Of a stretch of 64,000 nt of DNA, positions 5,290 through 63,582 are shown piece after piece. The stretch lies in IMG/VR virus record IMGVR_UViG_3300010430_000003, positions 62,001 through 126,000 of that record; one strand, written 5' to 3'. The position numbers and the translations under genes were made by a program. Numbering within the stretch: the first letter of the stretch is position 1; each line of letters starts with the position of its first letter. The notes beneath the pieces are model-generated. The model saw nothing but the letters and a program-made list of their open reading frames with translations, was not told where the DNA came from and did no database searches.

Positions 5290-7734
5290 ATGTCCTTAAA
5301 AGACTTATTTGCAACAAATAAAACAAAAGCGTTTATAACATATGAAGCAAGAAGAGCATCTTCCGATGTAGAAGGTGAAATTCCTGCACTTGACCTTTAT
5401 GGTCAAATAGGATTATATGGTAGGATTGATTATGCCTTCAATGCCGTGTATCCATCCGAAGCTTTCTTAAAAGAAATTGAAGATGGAATGTTTGCTTTGA
5501 ATTTTGTCTCCGATGCCTATAAAGACTTTCAAGAACATTTTGTAAAGCTCCGACAACTAAATAAACTCGCAAGTAAAAACACAAACCTTAAGACTATTAA
5601 AGCAACTGCGAGTTGGAGAAGCCTCCCAGAAGCTCATCATAAATACACTAAGATAGTGTTTGATACATTCTTTCAAACTTATGGAAAGAATCTTGGCACT
5701 GTTAGCATTGAAGAGTTTATCAATGTATTTTATCGATTTTTGAAAGATTCTCGTGACTCTCTTGTTCTTACAAGAACTTCATTTATTGAATCATCAATGT
5801 ATGATCCTTTGATGTCAGCCCTAATGATTGAATTGGCTGAAGAAGATAAAGGTGATGATACAATTAAAAGAAAATATTATGAAGATCCTAATTTTGATAT
5901 TTATCAAAAGGTATTAAGAATTTATGGATTCAAGAATGATAAAAATCATCCTTGGAGAATAATTGCAGATATTGAATCTGCTCCAATGCTTCGATATATG
6001 GAAAAATATGGAGTTAATAATAAAACCATGTTTGATGAATTCTTTTATCGAAGTTATGAATTGGATATGGATATCATTCAAGAATATATTCGTGAATATT
6101 ATAACTATCATGATGTTGAAATGTCGAAGAGAAAGCCTGCAATTATAAAAGAAGAAAGGATTGCTCTCCCAAGTCCAAACTTTGAAGACGGGGCGATTCA
6201 ATTAACTGACATATCAAAATATTCCGATATATTGGAGACTAAAGAAGTCAAAACAAAACCAGTTTTGGTTATAAATCTTAAAAAAGAGCAAAAGCCAAAA
6301 TCATTAAGTTCAACCTCCTCTAAGTTTGGGGAGACAGCACCGGAACCTCCGCCGGAACCTCCGCCGGAACCACCACCACCAAGTCTCGATGACTTCCCTG
6401 AGCTTTTATATGGTTGGGAAAGCACTAGTGGGTTAGGGACTCCCGCTTTGGAGGACCAGATCCAAACATGGGAGCCCGTGGTGGGAACGGAAGATCTAAC
6501 CCAAGCAACTTTGGCCAAACGCCCAAGGTTTATTCCGGGTGCCTATACATCCAGTGGCAACCCGCTTGTTTGTTTTCTAAACAACTCGAATGCCGCCAGT
6601 ATGGAAACAGGCGCCATTACAACACTGCCCCAGCCTTACACAAAAATTGTAGTATTCATTGATCCCGCTCAAGACTCTCTTAACGGGGGGCTACACTCGT
6701 ATGTTTCGTCTCCCGGTAGTGGTCGTGGGTATTTGGGTAGGAATGGTAATGCCGCTGACAAATTTAGCTACAATATTAATGGCGGAAACACCGTGGATCC
6801 GGGTGTGGATACGGGACCCCTCCCAGACAACCGAGTTAGTGTTGCTTTTGCCCGTTTTGACGGCACAAGTTCTAGCGTGTGGTCAAATGGAACGCAGGGC
6901 TCCGATGTAGATGCTGGTACTAATTCTATTGTCCAGCTTAGGGTGTCAACCGGTCCTAGTGATATAGAAAGTGGCAACTGCTATATGATTGCACACTATA
7001 TATGGGACGGCTCTATCACGGCTGATAGACTGACGGATTTCGTAGCATATCTAGACTACTGGTTTCGACCATCGTGGTCGCAAGGTTCTACGTTTCCGAC
7101 ATTCACATCAACAGATGCATTCGAATTAGATGCCACAGACCTCACCGAAGGCGACGGCGTCACCATCACCTCGAACTGGGTCGATCGCGAGAATGGTTAT
7201 ATCTTCGCGCCCACAGGCGCACCAACAATGGATATAGATGGCGGTCCTCGTAAGCAAAAGGCAGTTGTATTTGACGGGACTGCGGGGGACTGGTTTCAGA
7301 ATACTGCGGATGTAACATGGTCACAACCCGGTACAATTATTGCGGAGTTTAAGTATGACGGAGCTGCGCCCGGCTTCCACATTACAGATGGAGTTAACGG
7401 AAGTCAAAGGTGGGCAGTCTGGGCAAGCGCACTCTCACCCGCAGCCTATGCTGGTGCAACAATTCAGAACGCAAATGTTCCTTTAGTGACAGGATTGGGC
7501 TGGAGGCATAATGCCTGCGTATTCGACGGCTCAAACAGTTCAGTGTTCGTTGACGGAATCCTTGAGTCCACTGGCAATGCTGGTACCCAGACACTAGGTG
7601 GCGGCTTACGCATAGGTAATAACTATCTTAATAGTGGTGCTGTTAAAGGGACTCTTAGCTGGATAGCTGGTTGGGATATTGCATTAACCCAGACGCAGGT
7701 TCTCGAAGTGTTGAAATACCGTGGCCTGATATGA
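5290..7734 (+). CDS. virion protein: phage N-terminal domain + Pro linker + two LamG/ConA-like domains
   Basis: PEPPPEPPPEPPPP linker; FDGTSSSVWSNG and WRHNACVFDGSNSSVFVDG...LRIG...GTLSWIAGWDIALTQTQV are LamG-like. Confidence 0.65.
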   Translation: MSLKDLFATNKTKAFITYEARRASSDVEGEIPALDLYGQIGLYGRIDYAFNAVYPSEAFLKEIEDGMFALNFVSDAYKDFQEHFVKLRQLNKLASKNTNLKTIKATASWRSLPEAHHKYTKIVFDTFFQTYGKNLGTVSIEEFINVFYRFLKDSRDSLVLTRTSFIESSMYDPLMSALMIELAEEDKGDDTIKRKYYEDPNFDIYQKVLRIYGFKNDKNHPWRIIADIESAPMLRYMEKYGVNNKTMFDEFFYRSYELDMDIIQEYIREYYNYHDVEMSKRKPAIIKEERIALPSPNFEDGAIQLTDISKYSDILETKEVKTKPVLVINLKKEQKPKSLSSTSSKFGETAPEPPPEPPPEPPPPSLDDFPELLYGWESTSGLGTPALEDQIQTWEPVVGTEDLTQATLAKRPRFIPGAYTSSGNPLVCFLNNSNAASMETGAITTLPQPYTKIVVFIDPAQDSLNGGLHSYVSSPGSGRGYLGRNGNAADKFSYNINGGNTVDPGVDTGPLPDNRVSVAFARFDGTSSSVWSNGTQGSDVDAGTNSIVQLRVSTGPSDIESGNCYMIAHYIWDGSITADRLTDFVAYLDYWFRPSWSQGSTFPTFTSTDAFELDATDLTEGDGVTITSNWVDRENGYIFAPTGAPTMDIDGGPRKQKAVVFDGTAGDWFQNTADVTWSQPGTIIAEFKYDGAAPGFHITDGVNGSQRWAVWASALSPAAYAGATIQNANVPLVTGLGWRHNACVFDGSNSSVFVDGILESTGNAGTQTLGGGLRIGNNYLNSGAVKGTLSWIAGWDIALTQTQVLEVLKYRGLI
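6340..6380 (+). repeat. 12-bp tandem repeat encoding a PEPP linker
   Basis: CCGGAACCTCCG x2 followed by CCGGAACCACCACCACC. Confidence 0.85.
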
Positions 7735-55991: not shown

Positions 55992-57188
55992 ATGGCAGAC
56001 CAAGTTTTTCATGAAATCTCTTTCTCGGAATTCACTCGCGTAGCACCGTACATTATTGACGCGGGTTATCCAATCATGCTTCGTGGGAAGCATGGAATTG
56101 GAAAATCAGAATTGGTTTATTGGCTTGCAGAACATCACTGCAAGCTTCCAATTGTTGAGCGGCGAGCTAGTCAAATGGATGTGGGTGACCTTGTTGGTCT
56201 ACCCGTTCTTAAAGATGGGAACACTGGCTTTGCTCCACCGGATTGGTTGGCACGAGCATGTAATGAGCCTGTTGCCCTTTTCCTTGACGAAGTGGATCGT
56301 GCTACATTGGAAGTAGCACAAGGTATTTTCGAACTTTGTGATTCTCGGAAGATCTACGGTAACACACTTCACCCCGGAACTAAGGTCTTTGCTGCTGTTA
56401 ACGGCGGCGCTTCTGGTTCACAATATCAAGTGCGCGAGATGGATCCTGCTGAGCTAGACCGGTGGTCAGTATTTGATGTTCGTCCATCTGTGGATGATTG
56501 GCTTGAGTGGGCTTCCAATTATGGAAAGGTTGAGAACATTGTTCTTGAGTTCCTTGCTGGTAATCGGGAGCATCTTGAGAATATCAACGAACATGACGCA
56601 AGCATTGTTTATCCCTCCCGTCGTTCTTGGGTGCGATTTGATCGCGTGCTTAAGCAGATTAATGATTCCGGGGGTGATTTCTATACCTTCAAGGGTTTGG
56701 AAAACATTGGATCATCCATCATTGGTCTTTCCGCTGCGGTAGCGTTCGGTGAGTTTGTTCGAACTTACAATACTGCTGTTACTTTCGAGGATGTCCTTAA
56801 AGGTAATAAAAAGAAGAAGTGGAAAGACTTGGATTTCGAGCAATACAACATGATTGGTCGTTACCTGAAACATCAAGCTCCGGAAAGCCCTGACTACTGG
56901 CGCACAAACGAAGTCGAACAACCAGAACCAACCTCCAGCGAAATGAACAATGTTCGTGAATTCCTGTTGGAGTGTCCTGACGAAATCCTGATTAACGTGA
57001 CGCGCCTCGCTCACCCAATGGTTTCATCAACCCTCACCTCTCCTCCCCGTACTCTTCGAAACAAAAAGCGCAAGAGTGCTAAGGACAAGAAATCTCTCAA
57101 GCTCATGGAGAGCCTTAAGACCAAAATGCGAGAGGCTTCTGTGTATATGGCCAATAAGGCTGACGAAGAAAAGGCTGAAAAAGAATAA
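55992..57188 (+). CDS. MoxR/AAA_5-type ATPase (second copy)
   Basis: GKHGIGKS, FLDEVDRA, AAVN, MDPAELDRW, PSRRSW. Confidence 0.9.
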   Translation: MADQVFHEISFSEFTRVAPYIIDAGYPIMLRGKHGIGKSELVYWLAEHHCKLPIVERRASQMDVGDLVGLPVLKDGNTGFAPPDWLARACNEPVALFLDEVDRATLEVAQGIFELCDSRKIYGNTLHPGTKVFAAVNGGASGSQYQVREMDPAELDRWSVFDVRPSVDDWLEWASNYGKVENIVLEFLAGNREHLENINEHDASIVYPSRRSWVRFDRVLKQINDSGGDFYTFKGLENIGSSIIGLSAAVAFGEFVRTYNTAVTFEDVLKGNKKKKWKDLDFEQYNMIGRYLKHQAPESPDYWRTNEVEQPEPTSSEMNNVREFLLECPDEILINVTRLAHPMVSSTLTSPPRTLRNKKRKSAKDKKSLKLMESLKTKMREASVYMANKADEEKAEKE

Positions 57189-57224
57189 GTTCGCGGAAGG
57201 TGAGGCCACCTATTTTAAGAGCCA

Positions 57225-57329
57225 TCGTGTGAGCTAGATCTGGGGTGCTTGTTCATTCATTGTACTTTGGGCGACATCTATTCGTTTCCTAAAGTCAGAA
57301 CAAGGCGGGGTTCAATTCCCCCACACGTA
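57225..57329 (+). ncRNA. tRNA-like RNA with an extended inner arm
   Basis: CGTGTG/CACACG acceptor-like stem, GGGG-TTCAATT-CCCC T-arm, CTTGTTC/GAACAAG and ACTTTGG/CTAAAGT inner stems. Confidence 0.6.
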
Positions 57330-57689: not shown

Positions 57690-57694
57690 TCTTT

Positions 57695-57766
57695 TCGGAG
57701 ATCGTCTAACTGGCAAGACACAGGACTTTGAATCCTGCAATCTAGGTTCGAACCCTAGTCTCCGAA
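57695..57766 (+). tRNA. tRNA-Gln(TTG), CCA not encoded
   Basis: TCGGAGA/TCTCCGA acceptor, GTCT/AGAC D stem, CAGGA-CTTTGAA-TCCTG anticodon arm, CTAGG-TTCGAAC-CCTAG T arm. Confidence 0.95.
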
Positions 57767-57767
57767 T

Positions 57768-58290: not shown

Positions 58291-59778
58291 GTGAATAAAC
58301 CAGACGGTATTTCTAAAGAAGAATTCTTCAAGGAATTGGATAAGCTTGTTGAACTCGATAAGAAGGCTAAAAAGTATAGTCTTTCTAGAGATGTTCTTGC
58401 ATTGCTTAAGGATGAACCATTCTTTGCATGCGTATCTCGCTTTGTTACAAAAAGGCGAACAACCCAAATTCCAACTGCGGCGATTTATATCGACAAGAAG
58501 ACATTTCGCCCCGTGATGATTTACAACCCTCGCTTTATGGTTTCTTTGCCGATGGAACAACGCAAGGGAATTATTAAACATGAGTATTATCATCTGATTC
58601 TGAACCACATCACCCAGAATCGGATGGACTTCAATAAGAAGAACCAGAAGCTTTGGAATGTTGCAATGGATCTTGCAATCAACTCCTTTCTTATGGAAGA
58701 ACTCCCAGACTTTGCTCTATTTCCAACTAAGGGGATGTTTAAAGACATGCCAGCAGAGAAATCTTCTGAATGGTATAAACAAGCAATCCTTAACGACGAG
58801 GACGTGCTTGAGCAGTTAGGTTTAGATGAAAACGGTGAACCAAAGCCTTGTCCTAACTGTGGCGGGTCAGGTAATGTCTCATCTGATGAAGATGGTGAGC
58901 AACAAGGCCAAGGTAATGGTGGGGAGGAAGGACAAGAAGGACAAAGTCAAGGTGGGCATAGTCACGGTGATAGTGATCAAGAGTGTGACTGTGACAGTGG
59001 GCAGTGTTCTCATAACCCCGGAGAAGGTGGTGGAGGGGGAGGTAATGTAAAGCCATGCCCTTGTTGTAATAATCATGGCATTGATGATCATTCTTTGTGG
59101 GATGATTTGTCGGAAGAAGAAAGAAACATTGTAGAGAAAAAGATGCGGCGAGTTCTTTCTGATGCTGTCCATGAAGCAAAGCGGCAAAATAACTCCAAGG
59201 GTTGGGGTACTGTTTCTGTTCATGTTCAAGGGTATCTTGAAAAGCTTCTTAAGAATAGCCTTAATTGGAAAGGCATTCTGCGAATGTTTGTTCAAGCTTC
59301 TATCAAGGCTGAACGGTATTCTACCATTAAGAAAGTTAACAAGAGGTATCCATGGCTCCATCCGGGTAAGGCTCGTCGAAGGACAGCTAATATTGCTGTG
59401 GCTATTGATCAGTCAGGTTCAGTTGGTAATGTTCTCCTAACTAAGTTCTTTGCGGAATTGAACGCTCTAAGCAAAATTGTAACCTTTACTGTGATTCCTT
59501 TTGATCATGAGGTCTTTGAAGAAAAGGTCTATAAGTGGCAAAAAGGGCAAAAGTTTGAACCTCACAGGGTATTGTGTGGAGGTACTGATTTCTCTGCACC
59601 AACTAGGTATGCTAATGAAAACGGTCCGTTTGATGGTTTGATTATGCTTACCGATATGGAAGCCCCTGAACCTATTCCTGCTCGAATGCAGCGAATCTGG
59701 GTAACTTCTGAATCCTGTGCACGTAGTATGTACTACAAGCCCACCTCTGAAAGAGTTCTAGTGATTCCTGATGAGTGA
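58291..59778 (+). CDS. metallopeptidase + VWA-like protein (second copy) with a Cys/Gly-rich insert
   Basis: IKHEYYH, WNVAMDLAIN, DQSGS, GGTDF, LTD; insert CPNC...CDC...CPCC. Confidence 0.88.
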   Translation: MNKPDGISKEEFFKELDKLVELDKKAKKYSLSRDVLALLKDEPFFACVSRFVTKRRTTQIPTAAIYIDKKTFRPVMIYNPRFMVSLPMEQRKGIIKHEYYHLILNHITQNRMDFNKKNQKLWNVAMDLAINSFLMEELPDFALFPTKGMFKDMPAEKSSEWYKQAILNDEDVLEQLGLDENGEPKPCPNCGGSGNVSSDEDGEQQGQGNGGEEGQEGQSQGGHSHGDSDQECDCDSGQCSHNPGEGGGGGGNVKPCPCCNNHGIDDHSLWDDLSEEERNIVEKKMRRVLSDAVHEAKRQNNSKGWGTVSVHVQGYLEKLLKNSLNWKGILRMFVQASIKAERYSTIKKVNKRYPWLHPGKARRRTANIAVAIDQSGSVGNVLLTKFFAELNALSKIVTFTVIPFDHEVFEEKVYKWQKGQKFEPHRVLCGGTDFSAPTRYANENGPFDGLIMLTDMEAPEPIPARMQRIWVTSESCARSMYYKPTSERVLVIPDE

Positions 59779-60691
59779 TACTGTTGCATATGTTTCCTCG
59801 GTTATAAGAGCCTCCTCTTTTGATCGTTCTACTGGATATCTTTATAAGATTGATCTAGAAAGTGGTGAGATCTTAGAAAAATATGATTGGAATGGATCAT
59901 ATGAAGATTTCATGAATAACGAAAGAGGTGGCGAACGAGGCATAAGAGGGCTTGAGATTTATGACGGTAAACTCTATGCGGCAGTTAATAGAGGAATACT
60001 AGAATTTGATTTAGACCTTAATCTCATTCGCAAAGAAATCGATAGAAGATTCTTGGCAGGATTACATGAGATATGTGAATTTCAAGATAAACTATATGTA
60101 ACATCAACTGGCTATGATGGTATTGCAGAAGTAGACTTCAAAACTCTAAAAGTAGAGAAGATTTGGATCTTCAATAAGATTATGCAAAAATCAAGACTTC
60201 TATTGCATAATAGGCCCAAACTCAAGGACCAGTTTCATATTAATTCAATTTCTGCTTTTGCTGATAGGCTTGTTTATGGGAGTTCAAAGATGAAAGGTCA
60301 TTTAGATTTCTTTGAATTCAAAGAGATTCATCAACACCCAAAACCAAAAGGAACGTTTAAGCACAATACATATGAATATGAGGATTGTTATGTATCTTTG
60401 ATTACAAATAAAGAGGAGTTCTATTACTTCAATAAGAAGACTGGTAAACATAAATATATTCCTATCAAGTTTAGTGATCATGACACCTTCAAGACTAAAG
60501 AAAAAGAAGGGGTTGCTAAATACAATTGGCTAAGAGGTTTAGAGAGGTTAGATGAAGATAGGTTTGTTATTGGAAGTTCTCCAGCTAGGATTGGAATTTT
60601 CAATGTTAAAACAGAAGAATTGGAAAGAGAATTCTTCTTCTCTGATGATGTTAAAAATTGCATTCATGGTATAAAGCTCCTAACAGTATGA
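59771..60691 (+). CDS. beta-propeller-like hypothetical protein
   Basis: Repeated RG/HE/HIN/HN blade-like motifs (GIRGL, LHEI, HINSI, WLRGL). Confidence 0.65.
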   Translation: MSDTVAYVSSVIRASSFDRSTGYLYKIDLESGEILEKYDWNGSYEDFMNNERGGERGIRGLEIYDGKLYAAVNRGILEFDLDLNLIRKEIDRRFLAGLHEICEFQDKLYVTSTGYDGIAEVDFKTLKVEKIWIFNKIMQKSRLLLHNRPKLKDQFHINSISAFADRLVYGSSKMKGHLDFFEFKEIHQHPKPKGTFKHNTYEYEDCYVSLITNKEEFYYFNKKTGKHKYIPIKFSDHDTFKTKEKEGVAKYNWLRGLERLDEDRFVIGSSPARIGIFNVKTEELEREFFFSDDVKNCIHGIKLLTV

Positions 60692-60879
60692 ATATTAATC
60701 TTAAAATAGCTACTCACTTAACTCTCGAACAAGGTTTATCTCGTTCTAGTGCAGTGTCAGAGTGGATGAGGTTTTTTGAGTTGAGAGACTCTTATGTTAA
60801 GCCTACACATACAGGCGAGTGGGCACAGTTGATTGGGAGAAATAATTCACTAAGAATGTTACGTAAGGTGTTGAGGTAA
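60688..60879 (+). CDS. small ORF of the hNxxh family
   Basis: MNINLKIATHL; ATGA overlap. Confidence 0.6.
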   Translation: MNINLKIATHLTLEQGLSRSSAVSEWMRFFELRDSYVKPTHTGEWAQLIGRNNSLRMLRKVLR

Positions 60880-60881
60880 AA

Positions 60882-61205
60882 ATGATTTCTGAATTGAAAG
60901 GTCATGTACGCTATAAAGCAAGTTGGCTACTAGCGTTCGCCGTGGGTGATTTTCACTCACTTGTTAAAGATAACCGTTATGTTCTGCGGGATTGGCTTGG
61001 AACAGCAGACAGTACGTTAAACGATAAAGAGTGCTGGTTCATTAGAGATAAGTATCTTGGTAACATTACCATTGTCTCAGGACCAGAGGGTACATCCTAT
61101 AATCTTGCTTGGGATCATTATTCTGGAGATTATAGGGTTAACTTCAGAAACAAGAGTTGGTTTTATTTCTTTAAACGAATTCTTAAGAACATTGACAACA
61201 ACTAA
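60882..61205 (+). CDS. hypothetical protein
   Basis: RBS GAGGT. Confidence 0.6.
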   Translation: MISELKGHVRYKASWLLAFAVGDFHSLVKDNRYVLRDWLGTADSTLNDKECWFIRDKYLGNITIVSGPEGTSYNLAWDHYSGDYRVNFRNKSWFYFFKRILKNIDNN

Positions 61206-61227
61206 ATACTAACAAAGGAAAAGCAAA

Positions 61228-61878
61228 ATGTCAAACACCACTCCCCGCGAATTTACTCCTCGCACTGAAACTCTTCCTAACGGTGGCACTCGCACTGTTA
61301 CTGAAGATGGGTACATTCTTTACAAAGATTCCAAAGGTGAGTTGCATCGCGATCCTTCCGAGGGTCCGGCAGTAATTATTCCCGACATCTGTGTCGAGTT
61401 TCACATGAACAATAAGTTCCACCGATCGGTAGAAGATGGCCCTGCCGTTATTTGGTCCAATGGTGCTTATGAGTATCTTGAGGATAACAGTAGGCACAAT
61501 CCTAAAGGACCTGCCATCTGGACACCTTACAGCGAGAATGATCAGGTTGGCTATATCGTGAAGTTCATTCGCGATAAGAAAGTCATCAATGATGCTGAGG
61601 TTTGTGGCCCTTACTTCCTTGAGCCGGGAGATCAATACTTTGATCTCTTGAAAGAAGACCCTAATGATAATCACCTCTATCATGCTATTGAGGAGAAAGA
61701 GATTACTTACGAGGGTAAGAAAGTTAAGGACTTCTGGTTGGTGCAAACTCACGAGGAAGTTCGCTTGAGCCACCTTATCTTCATGACCAAGTGGGTTGAT
61801 TTGGATACTCACGAAGAGTATCGTCTTCCACAGGAAATGTACGATGCTATTGATTGGGAGCTTGACCGACTCAAGTAA
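61228..61878 (+). CDS. protein with HRxxxxGPA repeats
   Basis: LHRDPSEGPAVI, FHRSVEDGPAVI, RHNPKGPAIW. Confidence 0.8.
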   Translation: MSNTTPREFTPRTETLPNGGTRTVTEDGYILYKDSKGELHRDPSEGPAVIIPDICVEFHMNNKFHRSVEDGPAVIWSNGAYEYLEDNSRHNPKGPAIWTPYSENDQVGYIVKFIRDKKVINDAEVCGPYFLEPGDQYFDLLKEDPNDNHLYHAIEEKEITYEGKKVKDFWLVQTHEEVRLSHLIFMTKWVDLDTHEEYRLPQEMYDAIDWELDRLK

Positions 61879-61886
61879 TCGGTTAG

Positions 61887-61986
61887 ACTGGTAGGAAATA
61901 TGTTTAAGTTAGCTAAAACATGTTTGGCAGGCGTATATTATCAATGCATGGAATGATTATGCCGGGTTCGAATCCCACTACCAGTG
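61887..61986 (+). ncRNA. second tRNA-like RNA
   Basis: ACTGGTAG/CTACCAGT stem, GGG-TTCGAAT-CCC T-arm, AAATATGTTT/AAACATGTTT and GGCGTA/TATGCC inner hairpins. Confidence 0.55.
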
Positions 61987-62180
61987 TTGTTAATAAGAAA
62001 GTTGCAAAGTTGTACATGTTGCAATATTATTTTCAATATGTTGAAATTATCAAAAAATTTGATGGTGGCAGGGATTGTTATTTGGGGTATGCTAATAAAT
62101 TAAGTTATAAAGAATCTATCTCTTCTAAAATAATAAACATTGGACGATTAACACAAAAACAACAAAAGGAAAGAACATGA
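61986..62180 (+). CDS. hNxxh family module, start codon uncertain
   Basis: VVNKKVAKLYML begins immediately after the tRNA-like RNA. Confidence 0.4.
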   Translation, partial: VVNKKVAKLYMLQYYFQYVEIIKKFDGGRDCYLGYANKLSYKESISSKIINIGRLTQKQQKERT

Positions 62181-62530
62181 AATTTCGACACATTTACCTC
62201 TCTGATCATAATGAAAACCCAATGCCTGTTGCTACCATCTGTAGTGTTCAACATGAAGGTGCTGTAAGGTTTGCAATGGCAAGGTGCAACACACTAGACC
62301 AATTTGCAAAACGAACAGGTCGGAGAATCTCTCAAGGGCGGTTAGAAAAATGTAAGAGTCTTACAGGCTTCGCGTCACCCTTCACAGAAAGACTAGAGTC
62401 GCTCTTTAATAATGATTGCGCTCTCTTCACAAAAGAAGAAATCCCAGACCTGTTGAAAGCTCTTAAGAAGGAACTTTCTTTTAGGCACGACAAGACTTAT
62501 CGTGAGCTTGCACAGGAAAGGTCAATTTAG
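62177..62530 (+). CDS. hypothetical phage protein
   Basis: A.C...DQF.K..GR.I...R pattern; RBS. Confidence 0.7.
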   Translation: MKFRHIYLSDHNENPMPVATICSVQHEGAVRFAMARCNTLDQFAKRTGRRISQGRLEKCKSLTGFASPFTERLESLFNNDCALFTKEEIPDLLKALKKELSFRHDKTYRELAQERSI

Positions 62531-62571
62531 AACCACCCTTAATTTATTAATCTAGACAAACTCATAAGTGT

Positions 62572-62805
62572 ATGATGGAAGAAAAAAACAAAAGAGATCT
62601 TAAGAGAATTAGAGAAAAAGCTCTTAGAGATAGAGAAGTAGAAAAGGGTGTGCATGATGGGCGTATGTATACCAAAGTCCATAAAGTCAGAAAAGACAAG
62701 AACATTAACTATGAAGACGAAATGGATGAGTATTTTTGGGAAGAAGAGGAAATAGAAGAGCCTTCCGACGAAGAAGAAATTGAAGCATCACCTTGGAGAC
62801 GATAA
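62572..62805 (+). CDS. small basic/acidic hypothetical protein
   Basis: Basic N-half, acidic C-half. Confidence 0.55.
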   Translation: MMEEKNKRDLKRIREKALRDREVEKGVHDGRMYTKVHKVRKDKNINYEDEMDEYFWEEEEIEEPSDEEEIEASPWRR

Positions 62806-63008
62806 TGGATTCGTATATTAATATATTGATTCATTATCGTTTTTATGGAGACCTCCCAATGATACCTGAATTGCTGTATCAAAACTTTGAAATGGAACAA
62901 TATTCATCATCTATGTCTTCCTTTAATGAAAGCGAATATAAAGAAGACAACATATATTATGATTATGATCTTAACGGTTTAACTACATTACTGGAGACCA
63001 ATGCCTAG
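62805..63008 (+). CDS. small ORF of the hNxxh family
   Basis: MDSYINILIHYRFY; GGAG RBS; TAATG overlap. Confidence 0.6.
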   Translation: MDSYINILIHYRFYGDLPMIPELLYQNFEMEQYSSSMSSFNESEYKEDNIYYDYDLNGLTTLLETNA

Positions 63009-63582
63009 TCATTCATTTTGGTACACTGATACCAATGTTATTAAGAAAATATATGAGGTTTTTAACTATATTACTATCGATCCAACAACCTCCCCGGAAG
63101 CCAACAAGCGTGTCCGTGCTGAGTTCGTTTACACGATCGATGACTCATGCCTGACGACCCCGAAATGGCTTCCTGACGCCCCTGACGGCGCTGTGACGTG
63201 CTATATGAACCCCCCTTATTCTAAGGACTGTGATGGTACAAAACCCTATGTGGTTAAGCTATTAGAACAGCTAGATAAAGGTGTTGTTAACGCAGCTATC
63301 GTGCTTGTTAATTCATCTACTTCTTCAAGCTGGTTCCAGCTTTTAATGAAAAACAGTGAGCTTGTTTGTTTTCCATCAAAAAGGTTGTGTTTTGATGAAG
63401 ACCTTGATTACGTCAAGAAATATGTTGATCCCGAAGAGCCAGGGCATGGGCTAAAGACTGGCAAAGCTCCGAGATATGATAATGCTGTTTTTCTCTTAAT
63501 AAGTGACAGTTCATACAGTCATTATGCAGAGAACTTTATTGATTCTTTCTCCTCAATGGGTAGTGTATTAAAATTGGTATGA
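63001..63582 (+). CDS. phage N6-adenine DNA methyltransferase (Dam-like)
   Basis: WYT...IDP, YMNPPYS, WFQ, RLCF. Confidence 0.85.
   Translation: MPSHSFWYTDTNVIKKIYEVFNYITIDPTTSPEANKRVRAEFVYTIDDSCLTTPKWLPDAPDGAVTCYMNPPYSKDCDGTKPYVVKLLEQLDKGVVNAAIVLVNSSTSSSWFQLLMKNSELVCFPSKRLCFDEDLDYVKKYVDPEEPGHGLKTGKAPRYDNAVFLLISDSSYSHYAENFIDSFSSMGSVLKLV

What the first reader, a model, noticed from the sequence alone, without database searches (positions are those of the whole stretch)
61887..61986. tRNA-like RNA no. 2 with both inner arms rebuilt
It starts just after the stop codon of 61228-61878. It has an 8-bp stem ACTGGTAG/CTACCAGT closing a canonical T-loop (GGG-TTCGAAT-CCC), a 10-bp hairpin in the D position and a GGCGTA/TATGCC-based long arm in the anticodon position. 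It shares no primary sequence with element 1 but keeps the same logic (top half retained, bottom half altered), which suggests a recurrent class of tRNA mimics. An hNxxh module with no obvious start codon follows directly.
Basis: partly seen in the sequence, partly recalled or inferred. Interest (0 to 1): 0.62.

Follow-up and report, generated by a model that had tools for sequence, protein, structure and literature searches.

The report
Conserved tRNA-like punctuation element in phage
A 100-base RNA element in a 210-kb marine-sediment phage keeps the acceptor/T-arm half of a tRNA but has two long hairpins in place of the D and anticodon arms; relatives conserve it with compensating base changes, and it most likely marks a cutting site in a long phage transcript rather than decoding codons.

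Summary
It has an 8-bp closing stem, a GGG/TTCGAAT/CCC T arm, a 10-bp hairpin and a roughly 12-bp hairpin, and starts 8 nt after the stop of the 216-aa gene. ARAGORN and Rfam do not call it a tRNA. It is not chance: 0 of 300 shuffles gave the T-arm motif plus a 7-bp Watson-Crick acceptor. Homologous versions occupy the same gene slot in three other phage lineages. The top half is 32/32 identical in one lineage, where neighbouring genes are 59-71% identical. Across the four versions, 7 of 11 top-half pairs show changes on both sides. The inner hairpins keep their form but not their sequence. True tRNAs of this genome sit in the same context, 4-14 nt after a stop codon, with no encoded CCA. Other relatives carry terminator hairpins in this slot. 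The ORF from 61920 is not coding-like inside the element. The part after it looks like a real gene of about 56 codons, with a start codon exactly 23 nt past the element in all three long versions. Best reading: a tRNA-derived, t-element-like RNase P/RNase Z processing signal. Transcription and cleavage are untested. A second such element lies at 57226-57328.

The parts
61228..61878 (+). Upstream gene (216 aa, no Pfam/PHROG family). Its stop is 8 nt before the element.
   Evidence: ORF list; no family; homologues at 89, 80 and 61% identity led to the related loci.
61887..61986 (+). The whole tRNA-like element (100 nt, including discriminator G 61986).
   Evidence: MFE fold is a four-way cloverleaf-like junction. 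Missed by ARAGORN and Rfam. CM R1 finds homologues in L010, L006 and L014.
61887..61894 (+). 5' acceptor strand ACTGGTAG, pairing with 61978-61985.
   Evidence: Identical in L010; ATCGGTA/TACCGAT in L006, with two both-side changes.
61896..61925 (+). Hairpin 1 in the D-arm position (10-bp stem, 10-nt loop).
   Evidence: Only 41% identical to L010, yet L010 and L006 each also form a 10-bp stem at this position.
61926..61929 (+). Linker GGCA between the hairpins (GGUA in L010, GGUG in L006).
   Evidence: Alignments.
61930..61963 (+). Hairpin 2 in the anticodon-arm position (about 12 bp with two 1-nt bulges). The apical loop AATGCATG (61943-61950) contains the palindrome ATGCAT.
   Evidence: The loop and its closing pair are identical in L010; GTGCAC sits at the apex in L006.
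61964..61976 (+). T arm: GGG / TTCGAAT / CCC.
   Evidence: Becomes GAG/CTC in L006 and CAGG/CCTG in L014, both compensatory.
61978..61985 (+). 3' acceptor strand CTACCAGT. 12 nt lie between the T loop and the end of the acceptor, as in tRNA. No CCA is encoded.
   Evidence: The genome's true tRNAs also lack an encoded CCA.
62010..62180 (+). Probable small gene (TTG start, 56 codons plus stop). Its TGA overlaps the ATG of the next gene (ATGA).
   Evidence: Codon-usage score is 0.18-0.22 per codon, like real genes. The frame is open by chance with P about 0.001-0.003 in each of three genomes. BLASTP against L010 gives 33% identity, E 4e-8. An in-frame start lies 23 nt after the element in window, L010 and L006.
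62177..62530 (+). Downstream gene (117 aa, family without a name).
57226..57328 (+). It has a CGTGTG/CACACG closing stem, an inner long hairpin and a GGGG/TTCAATT/CCCC T arm. It ends 16 nt before the ATG of ORF 57345.
   Evidence: L010 carries the homologue with T stem GAGG/CCTC.
57694..57767 (+). True tRNA-Gln(UUG), shown for context. It lies 4 nt after the upstream stop, and the next ORF's ATG follows directly.

Best explanation
The element descends from a tRNA gene and no longer decodes. Selection keeps the acceptor/T-arm 'top half', the part read by RNase P, RNase Z and the CCA-adding enzyme. The D and anticodon arms are replaced by two long hairpins. It lies inside a co-directional gene array, in the same kind of slot as the phage's true tRNAs. 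I infer that it is co-transcribed with its neighbours and cut out by the host tRNA-processing enzymes. RNase P would cut at 61886/61887, ending the upstream message 8 nt after its stop codon. RNase Z or an equivalent would cut after G61986. That second cut would create the 5' end of the downstream message, 23 nt before the start of a small gene of about 56 codons that is translationally coupled to the 117-aa gene. This is the logic of a plant-mitochondrial t-element, or of tRNA punctuation. Shown here: the structure, its conservation and covariation, its genomic context, and the non-coding character of its interior. Inferred: transcription, cleavage by RNase P and RNase Z, and any fate or role of the excised RNA.
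For: 1. All four homologous versions fold, unconstrained, into acceptor plus two hairpins plus T arm.
2. The top half is 32/32 nt identical between window and L010, while flanking genes are 59-71% identical and hairpin 1 is 41%.
3. Seven of 11 top-half pairs carry changes on both sides. 0 of 500 shuffles reach this, and slid controls drop from 89% to 30-50% paired.
4. The 12-nt distance from T loop to acceptor end is kept in window, L010 and L006. L014's acceptor register is ambiguous, at 11-12 nt.
5. Five of the genome's six true tRNAs lie on the gene strand between co-directional ORFs. Four of them sit 4-14 nt after a stop codon, tRNA-Gln abuts the next ATG, and none encodes CCA. The element's gap is 8 nt.
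6. An in-frame start codon lies exactly 23 nt past the discriminator in three diverged genomes.
7. In other relatives the same slot holds intrinsic-terminator-type hairpins (L005, L008/L009) or a roughly 50-bp hairpin (L026). The slot is therefore a place where transcript ends or structures are made.
8. The T-arm motif fits GGTTCRANYCC, which was used to find t-elements that are RNase P/Z substrates (PMC1920247).
9. A second element with the same architecture sits 16 nt before another ORF start and is also conserved.
Against: There is no RNA evidence at all. Only DNA runs hold the sequence. The T stem is weak, at 3-4 pairs. Nucleotide -1 is G in the window, whereas bacterial RNase P prefers U (U in the three other versions). 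The MFE z-score is only -2.0. The closest relative by the upstream protein (L005, 89% identity) lacks the T arm, so the element is dispensable. Only four independent sequences support the covariation, and the alignment was fitted to the structure. The processing model does not explain the conserved palindromic apex of hairpin 2 or the constant 10-bp length of hairpin 1. No protective hairpin is detectable upstream of the presumed RNase P site. A sigma-70-like promoter match at 62002-62030 could supply the downstream 5' end instead (promoter-like matches in the scanned region are no more frequent than in shuffles).
Confidence: 0.5

Rival explanations
1. A decaying tRNA pseudogene with no present function. 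The top half merely looks conserved because it is the last part to erode.
For: ARAGORN and Rfam reject it. The T stem is reduced to 3 pairs. It is lost in L005 and absent from L008/L009 and L026. The genome holds several other aberrant tRNA-like sequences.
Against: 32/32 identity of the top half against 59-71% in neighbouring genes. Both-side compensatory changes occur in acceptor and T stems. The hairpins keep their form (10-bp stem, apical palindrome) while their sequence turns over. The 23-nt spacing to the next start codon is fixed.
Confidence: 0.15
2. A trans-acting tRNA mimic. The excised 100-nt RNA, perhaps after CCA addition, is the functional product. It could be a decoy or sponge for a host enzyme or defence nuclease that recognises tRNA shape. 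It could also be an RNA that dimerises or binds a protein through the palindromic apical loop.
For: The apical loop AAUGCAUG with its closing C-G is identical in window and L010. In L006 it changes to GUGCAC, keeping the palindrome. Hairpin 1 keeps a 10-bp length in three lineages. A pure cutting signal needs none of this. Precedents for tRNA-like non-coding RNAs that are handled by tRNA enzymes include bacterial and phage YrlA (PMC4201824).
Against: No partner protein is evident: no TROVE/Ro, RtcB or CCA-adding enzyme gene in the phage. The short version L014 lacks both long hairpins yet occupies the same slot. There are no expression data.
Confidence: 0.2
3. The element is protein-coding. 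The ORF starts at ATG 61920 or at the ATG in the hairpin-2 apex (61944), and the T arm encodes part of a protein of 78-86 aa.
For: The frame is open from 61917 to 62180. In L010 a 78-aa gene was called from the equivalent apex ATG, with AGGAG 10 nt upstream. In L006 the apex holds an in-frame GTG-CAC (Val/Met-His) where the window has ATG-CAT, a synonymous-looking change.
Against: The codon-usage score inside the element is -0.08 per codon, and another frame scores better, against +0.22 after the element. Paired changes 90 nt apart (acceptor) cannot be explained by coding. In L014 the same frame is open for only 21 codons and holds no ATG, GTG or TTG; L005 has no T arm. That the T loop shares a frame with the downstream ORF follows simply from the fixed 23-nt spacing.
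Confidence: 0.1
4. A working but unusual tRNA (with introns, selenocysteine-like 8-bp acceptor, or suppressor), or an attP site copied from a host tRNA gene.
For: It has an 8-bp acceptor stem as in bacterial tRNA-Sec. Its 29 top-half nucleotides are identical to a true phage tRNA-Leu(UAA) in IMG/VR contig L002.
Against: No 7-nt anticodon loop with U33 is present; the loops are 8 and 10 nt. ARAGORN with introns allowed predicts nothing at this locus. Rfam tRNA, tRNA-Sec and tmRNA models give no hit even at E<=10. By inspection the hairpins have no bulge-helix-bulge motif. The phage has no tyrosine or serine integrase. The 22-mer of T arm plus 3' acceptor has 0 exact matches in one genome of each of 185,579 prokaryote species.
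Confidence: 0.05

Closest known systems
t-elements of plant mitochondria (tRNA-like processing signals; Forner et al. 2007, PMC1920247)
   Same: Both have a non-canonical cloverleaf with an intact acceptor stem and a T arm carrying GGTTCRANYCC. Both are embedded in longer transcripts next to protein genes. The proposed role is the same: directing RNase P and RNase Z cuts that make mRNA 3' and 5' ends.
   Different: This one is in a bacteriophage genome, not an organelle. Here the D and anticodon positions hold long, form-conserved hairpins. Cleavage has not been shown. There is no sequence relationship.
tRNA punctuation (true tRNAs between genes acting as processing sites, as in animal mitochondria)
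   Same: In this phage, five true tRNAs lie between co-directional ORFs. Four sit 4-14 nt after a stop codon, one abuts the next ATG, and none encodes CCA. The element occupies the same kind of slot.
   Different: The element is not a decoding tRNA.
YrlA / bacterial and phage Y RNAs with a tRNA-like domain (Chen et al. 2014, PMC4201824)
   Same: Both are tRNA-derived non-coding RNAs with a T arm and acceptor-like stem. Some are cut by RNase P and receive CCA.
   Different: In YrlA the 5'/3' ends form the Ro-binding stem and the 'acceptor' is a closed stem-loop. YrlA is encoded next to a Ro60 (TROVE) gene. Here the ends lie in the acceptor stem, the phage has no TROVE gene, and Rfam gives no hit.
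tRNA-like domain of tmRNA
   Same: The acceptor stem and T arm are kept, and the anticodon arm is replaced.
   Different: tmRNA is about 350 nt, with pseudoknots and a tag ORF between the two halves, and has G3:U70 alanine identity. Here the ORF lies 3' of the whole element, pair 3:70 is U-A, and ARAGORN and Rfam find no tmRNA.
Phage tRNA-Leu(UAA), e.g. L002:1128-1206(-)
   Same: The 7-nt 5' acceptor strand and the 22 nt of T arm plus 3' acceptor are identical. This is the likely kind of ancestor.
   Different: That gene is a normal 79-nt cloverleaf with an encoded CCA. The element has no D arm or anticodon loop.
Non-tRNA RNase P substrates of phages (phi80 M3 RNA) and the stable T4 'species 1/2' RNAs of the tRNA cluster (from memory; not checked here)
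   Same: They are phage-encoded small RNAs with tRNA-like ends, handled by tRNA-processing enzymes.
   Different: No sequence or structure comparison was possible with the tools at hand. This is a lead only.

Membership tests
Canonical tRNA (Rfam RF00005 / ARAGORN) | Scores above threshold with a tRNA covariance model or tRNA finder | tested here: not met
   Not reported by ARAGORN in default mode, nor with introns allowed at 90% threshold. No RF00005 hit at gathering score, at E<=1 on the window, or at E<=10 on 61700-62250.
Canonical tRNA (Rfam RF00005 / ARAGORN) | 7-bp acceptor stem and T loop T-T-C-R-A-N-Y, with 12 nt from T loop to acceptor end | tested here: met
   ACTGGTA/TACCAGT, TTCGAAT, then CCCAC plus TACCAGT.
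Canonical tRNA (Rfam RF00005 / ARAGORN) | 5-bp T stem, 3-4-bp D stem with a G18G19 loop, and 5-bp anticodon stem with a 7-nt loop and U33 | tested here: not met
   The T stem has 3 pairs. The D position holds a 10-bp hairpin whose loop has no GG. The anticodon position holds a roughly 12-bp hairpin with an 8-nt loop AAUGCAUG.
t-element (tRNA-like mRNA processing signal) | T-arm motif GGTTCRANYCC within a non-canonical cloverleaf | tested here: met
   GGTTCGAATCC at 61965-61975; fold; definition from PMC1920247.
t-element (tRNA-like mRNA processing signal) | Ends of the element coincide with mapped mRNA termini, and RNase P/RNase Z cut it | not testable with these tools
   Only DNA runs hold the sequence.
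tmRNA | tRNA-like domain formed by the 5' and 3' ends around an internal tag ORF and pseudoknots, with G3:U70 | tested here: not met
   No tmRNA by ARAGORN or Rfam. The element is 100 nt, pair 3:70 is U-A, and the ORF lies downstream of the complete element.
YrlA / Y RNA | Encoded beside a Ro60 (TROVE) gene, with a Ro-binding stem formed by the RNA ends | tested here: not met
   No TROVE match in the 210-kb genome. No Rfam hit. The ends lie in the acceptor stem.
tRNA-Sec (bacterial 8/5 type) | 8-bp acceptor, 5-bp T stem, 6-bp D stem, long variable arm and UCA anticodon | tested here: not met
   Only the 8-bp acceptor fits. There is no UCA in a 7-nt loop and no clan CL00001 hit.
Phage attP copied from a host tRNA gene | An integrase in the phage and an identical 3' tRNA segment in a host genome | tested here: not met
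   No Phage_integrase or Resolvase match. The 22-mer has 0 exact matches in genome contigs. Only species representatives and exact matches were tested.
Intron-containing tRNA | Removing an intron restores a canonical cloverleaf (group I intron, or a bulge-helix-bulge motif) | tested here: not met
   ARAGORN -i gives nothing at this locus. The inserts are 30-34 nt, too short for group I. The hairpins have no 3-nt bulge / 4-bp / 3-nt bulge motif (inspection). Cutting out hairpin 2 restores a 5-bp T stem in L010 and L006 but still leaves no anticodon arm.

The most novel reading that the evidence does not exclude
This jumbo phage and its relatives carry a family of exapted tRNA genes ('phage t-elements'). 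The preserved top half recruits host RNase P and RNase Z to cut long transcripts at fixed distances from start codons (23 nt here, 16 nt for the element at 57226-57328, 0 nt for tRNA-Gln). This would couple mRNA 5'-end formation to translation of small genes that lack a clear Shine-Dalgarno sequence. The excised RNA, with form-conserved 10-bp and palindrome-tipped hairpins, would have a second, trans-acting role such as dimerisation or acting as a decoy.
Probability: 0.25. Interest if true: 0.7.

Novelty: new variant of a known kind. Interest (0 to 1): 0.5.

Why it matters
Phage tRNA genes are usually discussed only as codon-usage helpers or as counter-measures to host tRNA cleavage. If this element and its siblings are processing signals, large phages would use tRNA shape to punctuate long transcripts, as organelles do. 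Genes that tRNA finders discard as junk would then be functional RNA. It would also give a compact, testable substrate for asking what bacterial RNase P and RNase Z need beyond the acceptor/T-arm helix. Finally, it would flag a small unannotated gene whose translation start sits at a fixed distance from an RNA cut site.

Tried and rejected
1. Blastn of 60500-63500 against 50,697 phage records found no match.
2. IMG/VR word searches with the 216-aa protein and with the 117-aa family found no syntenic relative. The DUF2201 protein gave two loci, L003 and L004, neither syntenic downstream.
3. The JGI metagenome scan returned only an identical copy, L015.
4. Reads: only DNA contigs, identical to the window. 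There were no variants to use for covariation and no RNA.
5. CM R1 on the whole genome and all loci found only the four homologues, then true tRNAs weakly (27 bits and below) and chance hits without a T loop. The model is dominated by the interior sequence and is not a detector of the wider class.
6. A protective hairpin upstream of the presumed RNase P site was sought and not supported. The z-scores are unremarkable and no different from those upstream of true tRNAs.
7. A promoter driving the element itself was considered. The only match (61862-61889) would start transcription inside the element, and the count of promoter-like sites is not above shuffles.
8. The Y-RNA, tmRNA, tRNA-Sec, attP and intron readings were each tested and not met (see the membership tests).
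9. A CCA-adding enzyme, RtcB or Ro gene in the phage that might point to a dedicated pathway was sought and none was found.
10. Literature searches for phage tRNA punctuation or phage t-elements found nothing specific.

Full report
Setting. The window is bases 62001-126000 of a complete 210,326-bp virus record with direct terminal repeats, 36.7% G+C. Near-identical DNA is present in several marine-sediment metagenomes. No RNA run holds it.

Observation.
- An 8-bp Watson-Crick stem (61887-61894 with 61978-61985) closes a four-way junction.
- The junction holds a 10-bp hairpin (61896-61925), a 4-nt linker GGCA and a hairpin of about 12 bp (61930-63, apical loop AATGCATG).
- It also holds a T arm, GGG/TTCGAAT/CCC (61964-61976).
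- The discriminator is G61986, and no CCA is encoded.
- The element begins 8 nt after the TAA of the 216-aa gene.
- The unconstrained MFE fold is exactly this structure, at -31.2 kcal/mol. The energy z-score is only -2.0.

The composite is far from chance. The T-arm motif GGTTCRANYCC occurs 3 times in the window against 0.2 expected. The motif with a canonically placed 7-bp Watson-Crick acceptor occurs twice (tRNA-Gln and this element), against none in 300 shuffles. ARAGORN and Rfam report only tRNA-Gln at 57694-57767, even at permissive thresholds.

Relatives. DNA and word-based searches of phage and IMG/VR collections gave no syntenic relative. Homologues of the two flanking proteins in the large protein collection led to contigs that share the gene order. 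The slot between the 216-aa and 117-aa gene families holds different things in different lineages:
- L010/L012/L013: a 120-nt version with the same acceptor and T arm.
- L006/L007: a 116-nt version with acceptor ATCGGTA/TACCGAT and T arm TGAG/TTCAAAT/CTCA.
- L014: a 66-nt version with acceptor CTCCCG/CGGGAG, a normal-looking D arm, a 4-bp mini-hairpin and T arm GCAGG/TTCGAAT/CCTGT.
- L005: a remnant of the 5' part followed by a terminator-type hairpin.
- L008/L009: a strong terminator-type hairpin (11-bp stem followed by T6).
- L026: a hairpin of about 50 bp.

All four tRNA-like versions fold, unconstrained, into acceptor plus two hairpins plus T arm.

Selection on the RNA.
- Between window and L010 the top half (9 + 23 nt) is 32/32 identical. 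The 117-aa gene is 71% identical, the end of the 216-aa gene 59%, and hairpin 1 only 41%.
- On a model-fitted alignment of the four versions, 7 of 11 acceptor and T-stem pairs show changes on both sides and 89% of cells are paired. None of 500 shuffles reaches these values, and sliding the partners drops pairing to 30-50%. The caveats are that there are four sequences and that the alignment was fitted to the structure.
- Hairpin 1 keeps a 10-bp stem in all three long versions although the sequence is replaced. L010 and L006 differ there by further both-side changes (by inspection).
- The apex of hairpin 2 keeps a palindromic hexamer: AUGCAU in window and L010, GUGCAC in L006.
- The 12-nt distance from T loop to acceptor end, the measure used by tRNA-end-processing enzymes, is kept in window, L010 and L006. 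In L014 the acceptor register is ambiguous (11-12 nt).

Coding or not. The frame 61917-62180 is open and ends in an ATGA overlap with the 117-aa gene.
- A codon-usage model trained on 104 long ORFs of the genome scores the part inside the element at -0.08 per codon, and another frame scores better.
- The part after the element scores +0.22, within the range of the neighbouring genes (0.17-0.33).
- The post-element frame stays open in window, L010 and L006, each with a chance probability of about 0.001-0.003.
- The window and L010 products align at 33% identity (E 4e-8).
- In all three long versions an in-frame start codon lies exactly 23 nt after the discriminator: TTG 62010, ATG in L010, ATG in L006.
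- The short version L014 has no ORF. The same frame is open there for only 21 codons and holds no ATG, GTG or TTG, and L005 has none either.

A small gene of about 56 codons (62010-62180) probably follows the element.

Context. The genome has six ARAGORN tRNAs. Five lie on the gene strand between co-directional ORFs. Four of these sit 4-14 nt after a stop codon, tRNA-Gln is followed at once by the next ATG, and none encodes CCA. The element sits in the same kind of slot.

A second element of the same logic lies at 57226-57328. It has a CGTGTG/CACACG closing stem, an inner long hairpin and a GGGG/TTCAATT/CCCC T arm, and it ends 16 nt before the ATG of ORF 57345. L010 conserves it with T stem GAGG/CCTC. 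Further aberrant tRNA-like sequences lie outside the window. My covariance model, dominated by interior sequence, does not link the elements.

Origin. The 7-nt 5' acceptor strand and the 22 nt of T arm plus 3' acceptor are identical to a normal tRNA-Leu(UAA) on an unrelated IMG/VR contig, L002. The 22-mer has no exact match in one genome of each of 185,579 prokaryote species. The phage has no integrase. A tRNA-gene ancestor is likely, and an attP reading is not.

Mechanism. The conserved part is the part that RNase P, RNase Z and the CCA-adding enzyme recognise. It is established knowledge that acceptor/T-arm minihelices are substrates of all three. The slot is one where relatives place terminators or large hairpins. 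The distance to the next start codon is fixed.

I therefore favour a cis-acting processing signal of the t-element type (PMC1920247). RNase P would cut at 61886/61887 and a 3' endonuclease would cut after 61986. These cuts would end the upstream message and create a 23-nt leader for the small gene. This step is inferred, not shown.

The form-conserved hairpins and the palindromic apex are not needed for that role. They leave room for a trans-acting function of the excised RNA. No Ro, RtcB or CCA-enzyme gene in the phage points to a partner. Tests of membership in tRNA, tmRNA, tRNA-Sec, YrlA, intron-containing tRNA and attP all fail on at least one defining feature.

Limits. There are no expression data. 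Only four independent homologues were found. The host is unknown. The comparison with T4 species 1/2 RNAs and phi80 M3 RNA rests on memory only.

Noticed in passing
It has a 6-bp closing stem CGTGTG/CACACG, an inner long hairpin and a T arm GGGG/TTCAATT/CCCC. A terminator-like hairpin (57198-57210, then TATTTT) precedes it, and it ends 16 nt before the SD and ATG of ORF 57345. L010 (about 725-836) has the homologue with T stem GAGG/CCTC.
   Followed up: partly
window 62010-62180 (+): A probable unannotated small gene (TTG start, 56 codons) with coding-like codon usage, an ATGA overlap with the 117-aa gene and no clear Shine-Dalgarno sequence. Its start codon lies exactly 23 nt after the tRNA-like element in three genomes.
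   Followed up: partly
window 61943-61950; L010 5767-5774; L006 about 5770-5777: The apex of hairpin 2 carries a palindromic hexamer: ATGCAT, ATGCAT and GTGCAC respectively. The change keeps both the palindrome and a 'start codon plus His codon' reading in the ORF frame. Its meaning is unresolved.
   Followed up: partly
L021:11608-11733 and L021:11745-11848 (genome 137408-137533 and 137545-137648, outside the window): Two adjacent long tRNA-like sequences (126 and 104 nt) with good acceptor stems and T arms (GCAGG/TTCGAAT/CCTGT and GGGG/TTCGAAC/CACC) but oversized interiors. The first keeps a normal D arm. The T arm of the first equals that of the short element in L014.
   Followed up: no
L022:11576-11645 (-) and L022:11780-11894 (-) (genome 157176-157245 and 157380-157494): A 70-nt degenerate tRNA (relaxed ARAGORN calls a 2-base anticodon) and a 115-nt sequence with T arm GTGGG/TTCGAAT/CCCAC. 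Relaxed ARAGORN reads the second as the 3' part of a tRNA-Asp with a 574-nt insert, so it may be an intron-bearing tRNA.
   Followed up: no
L023:14173-14256 (-) (genome 179573-179656): An 84-nt tRNA with a long variable arm and a CAT anticodon, which is an unusual combination. It is the only tRNA on the minus strand.
   Followed up: no
window 57694-57767 and genome-wide: True tRNAs are dispersed singly between co-directional ORFs, 4-14 nt after stop codons, and tRNA-Gln abuts the next ATG. None encodes CCA, and the phage has no CCA-adding enzyme gene.
   Followed up: yes
L026:508-671; L008:2818-2930; L005:3092-3199: In more distant relatives the same intergenic slot holds a hairpin of about 50 bp (-58.7 kcal/mol over 167 nt) or intrinsic-terminator-type hairpins instead of the tRNA-like element.
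   Followed up: partly
window 55992-57188 and 58291-59778: A MoxR-type AAA_5 ATPase gene and a DUF2201 (metallopeptidase-like plus VWA-like) gene form a conserved pair, also present in all related loci.
   Followed up: no
window 61228-61878: The 216-aa protein contains repeated (D/E)GPA(V/I)(I/W) motifs reminiscent of MORN-type repeats. It has no Pfam or PHROG hit, and only three homologue clusters were found among 5.8 billion.
   Followed up: no
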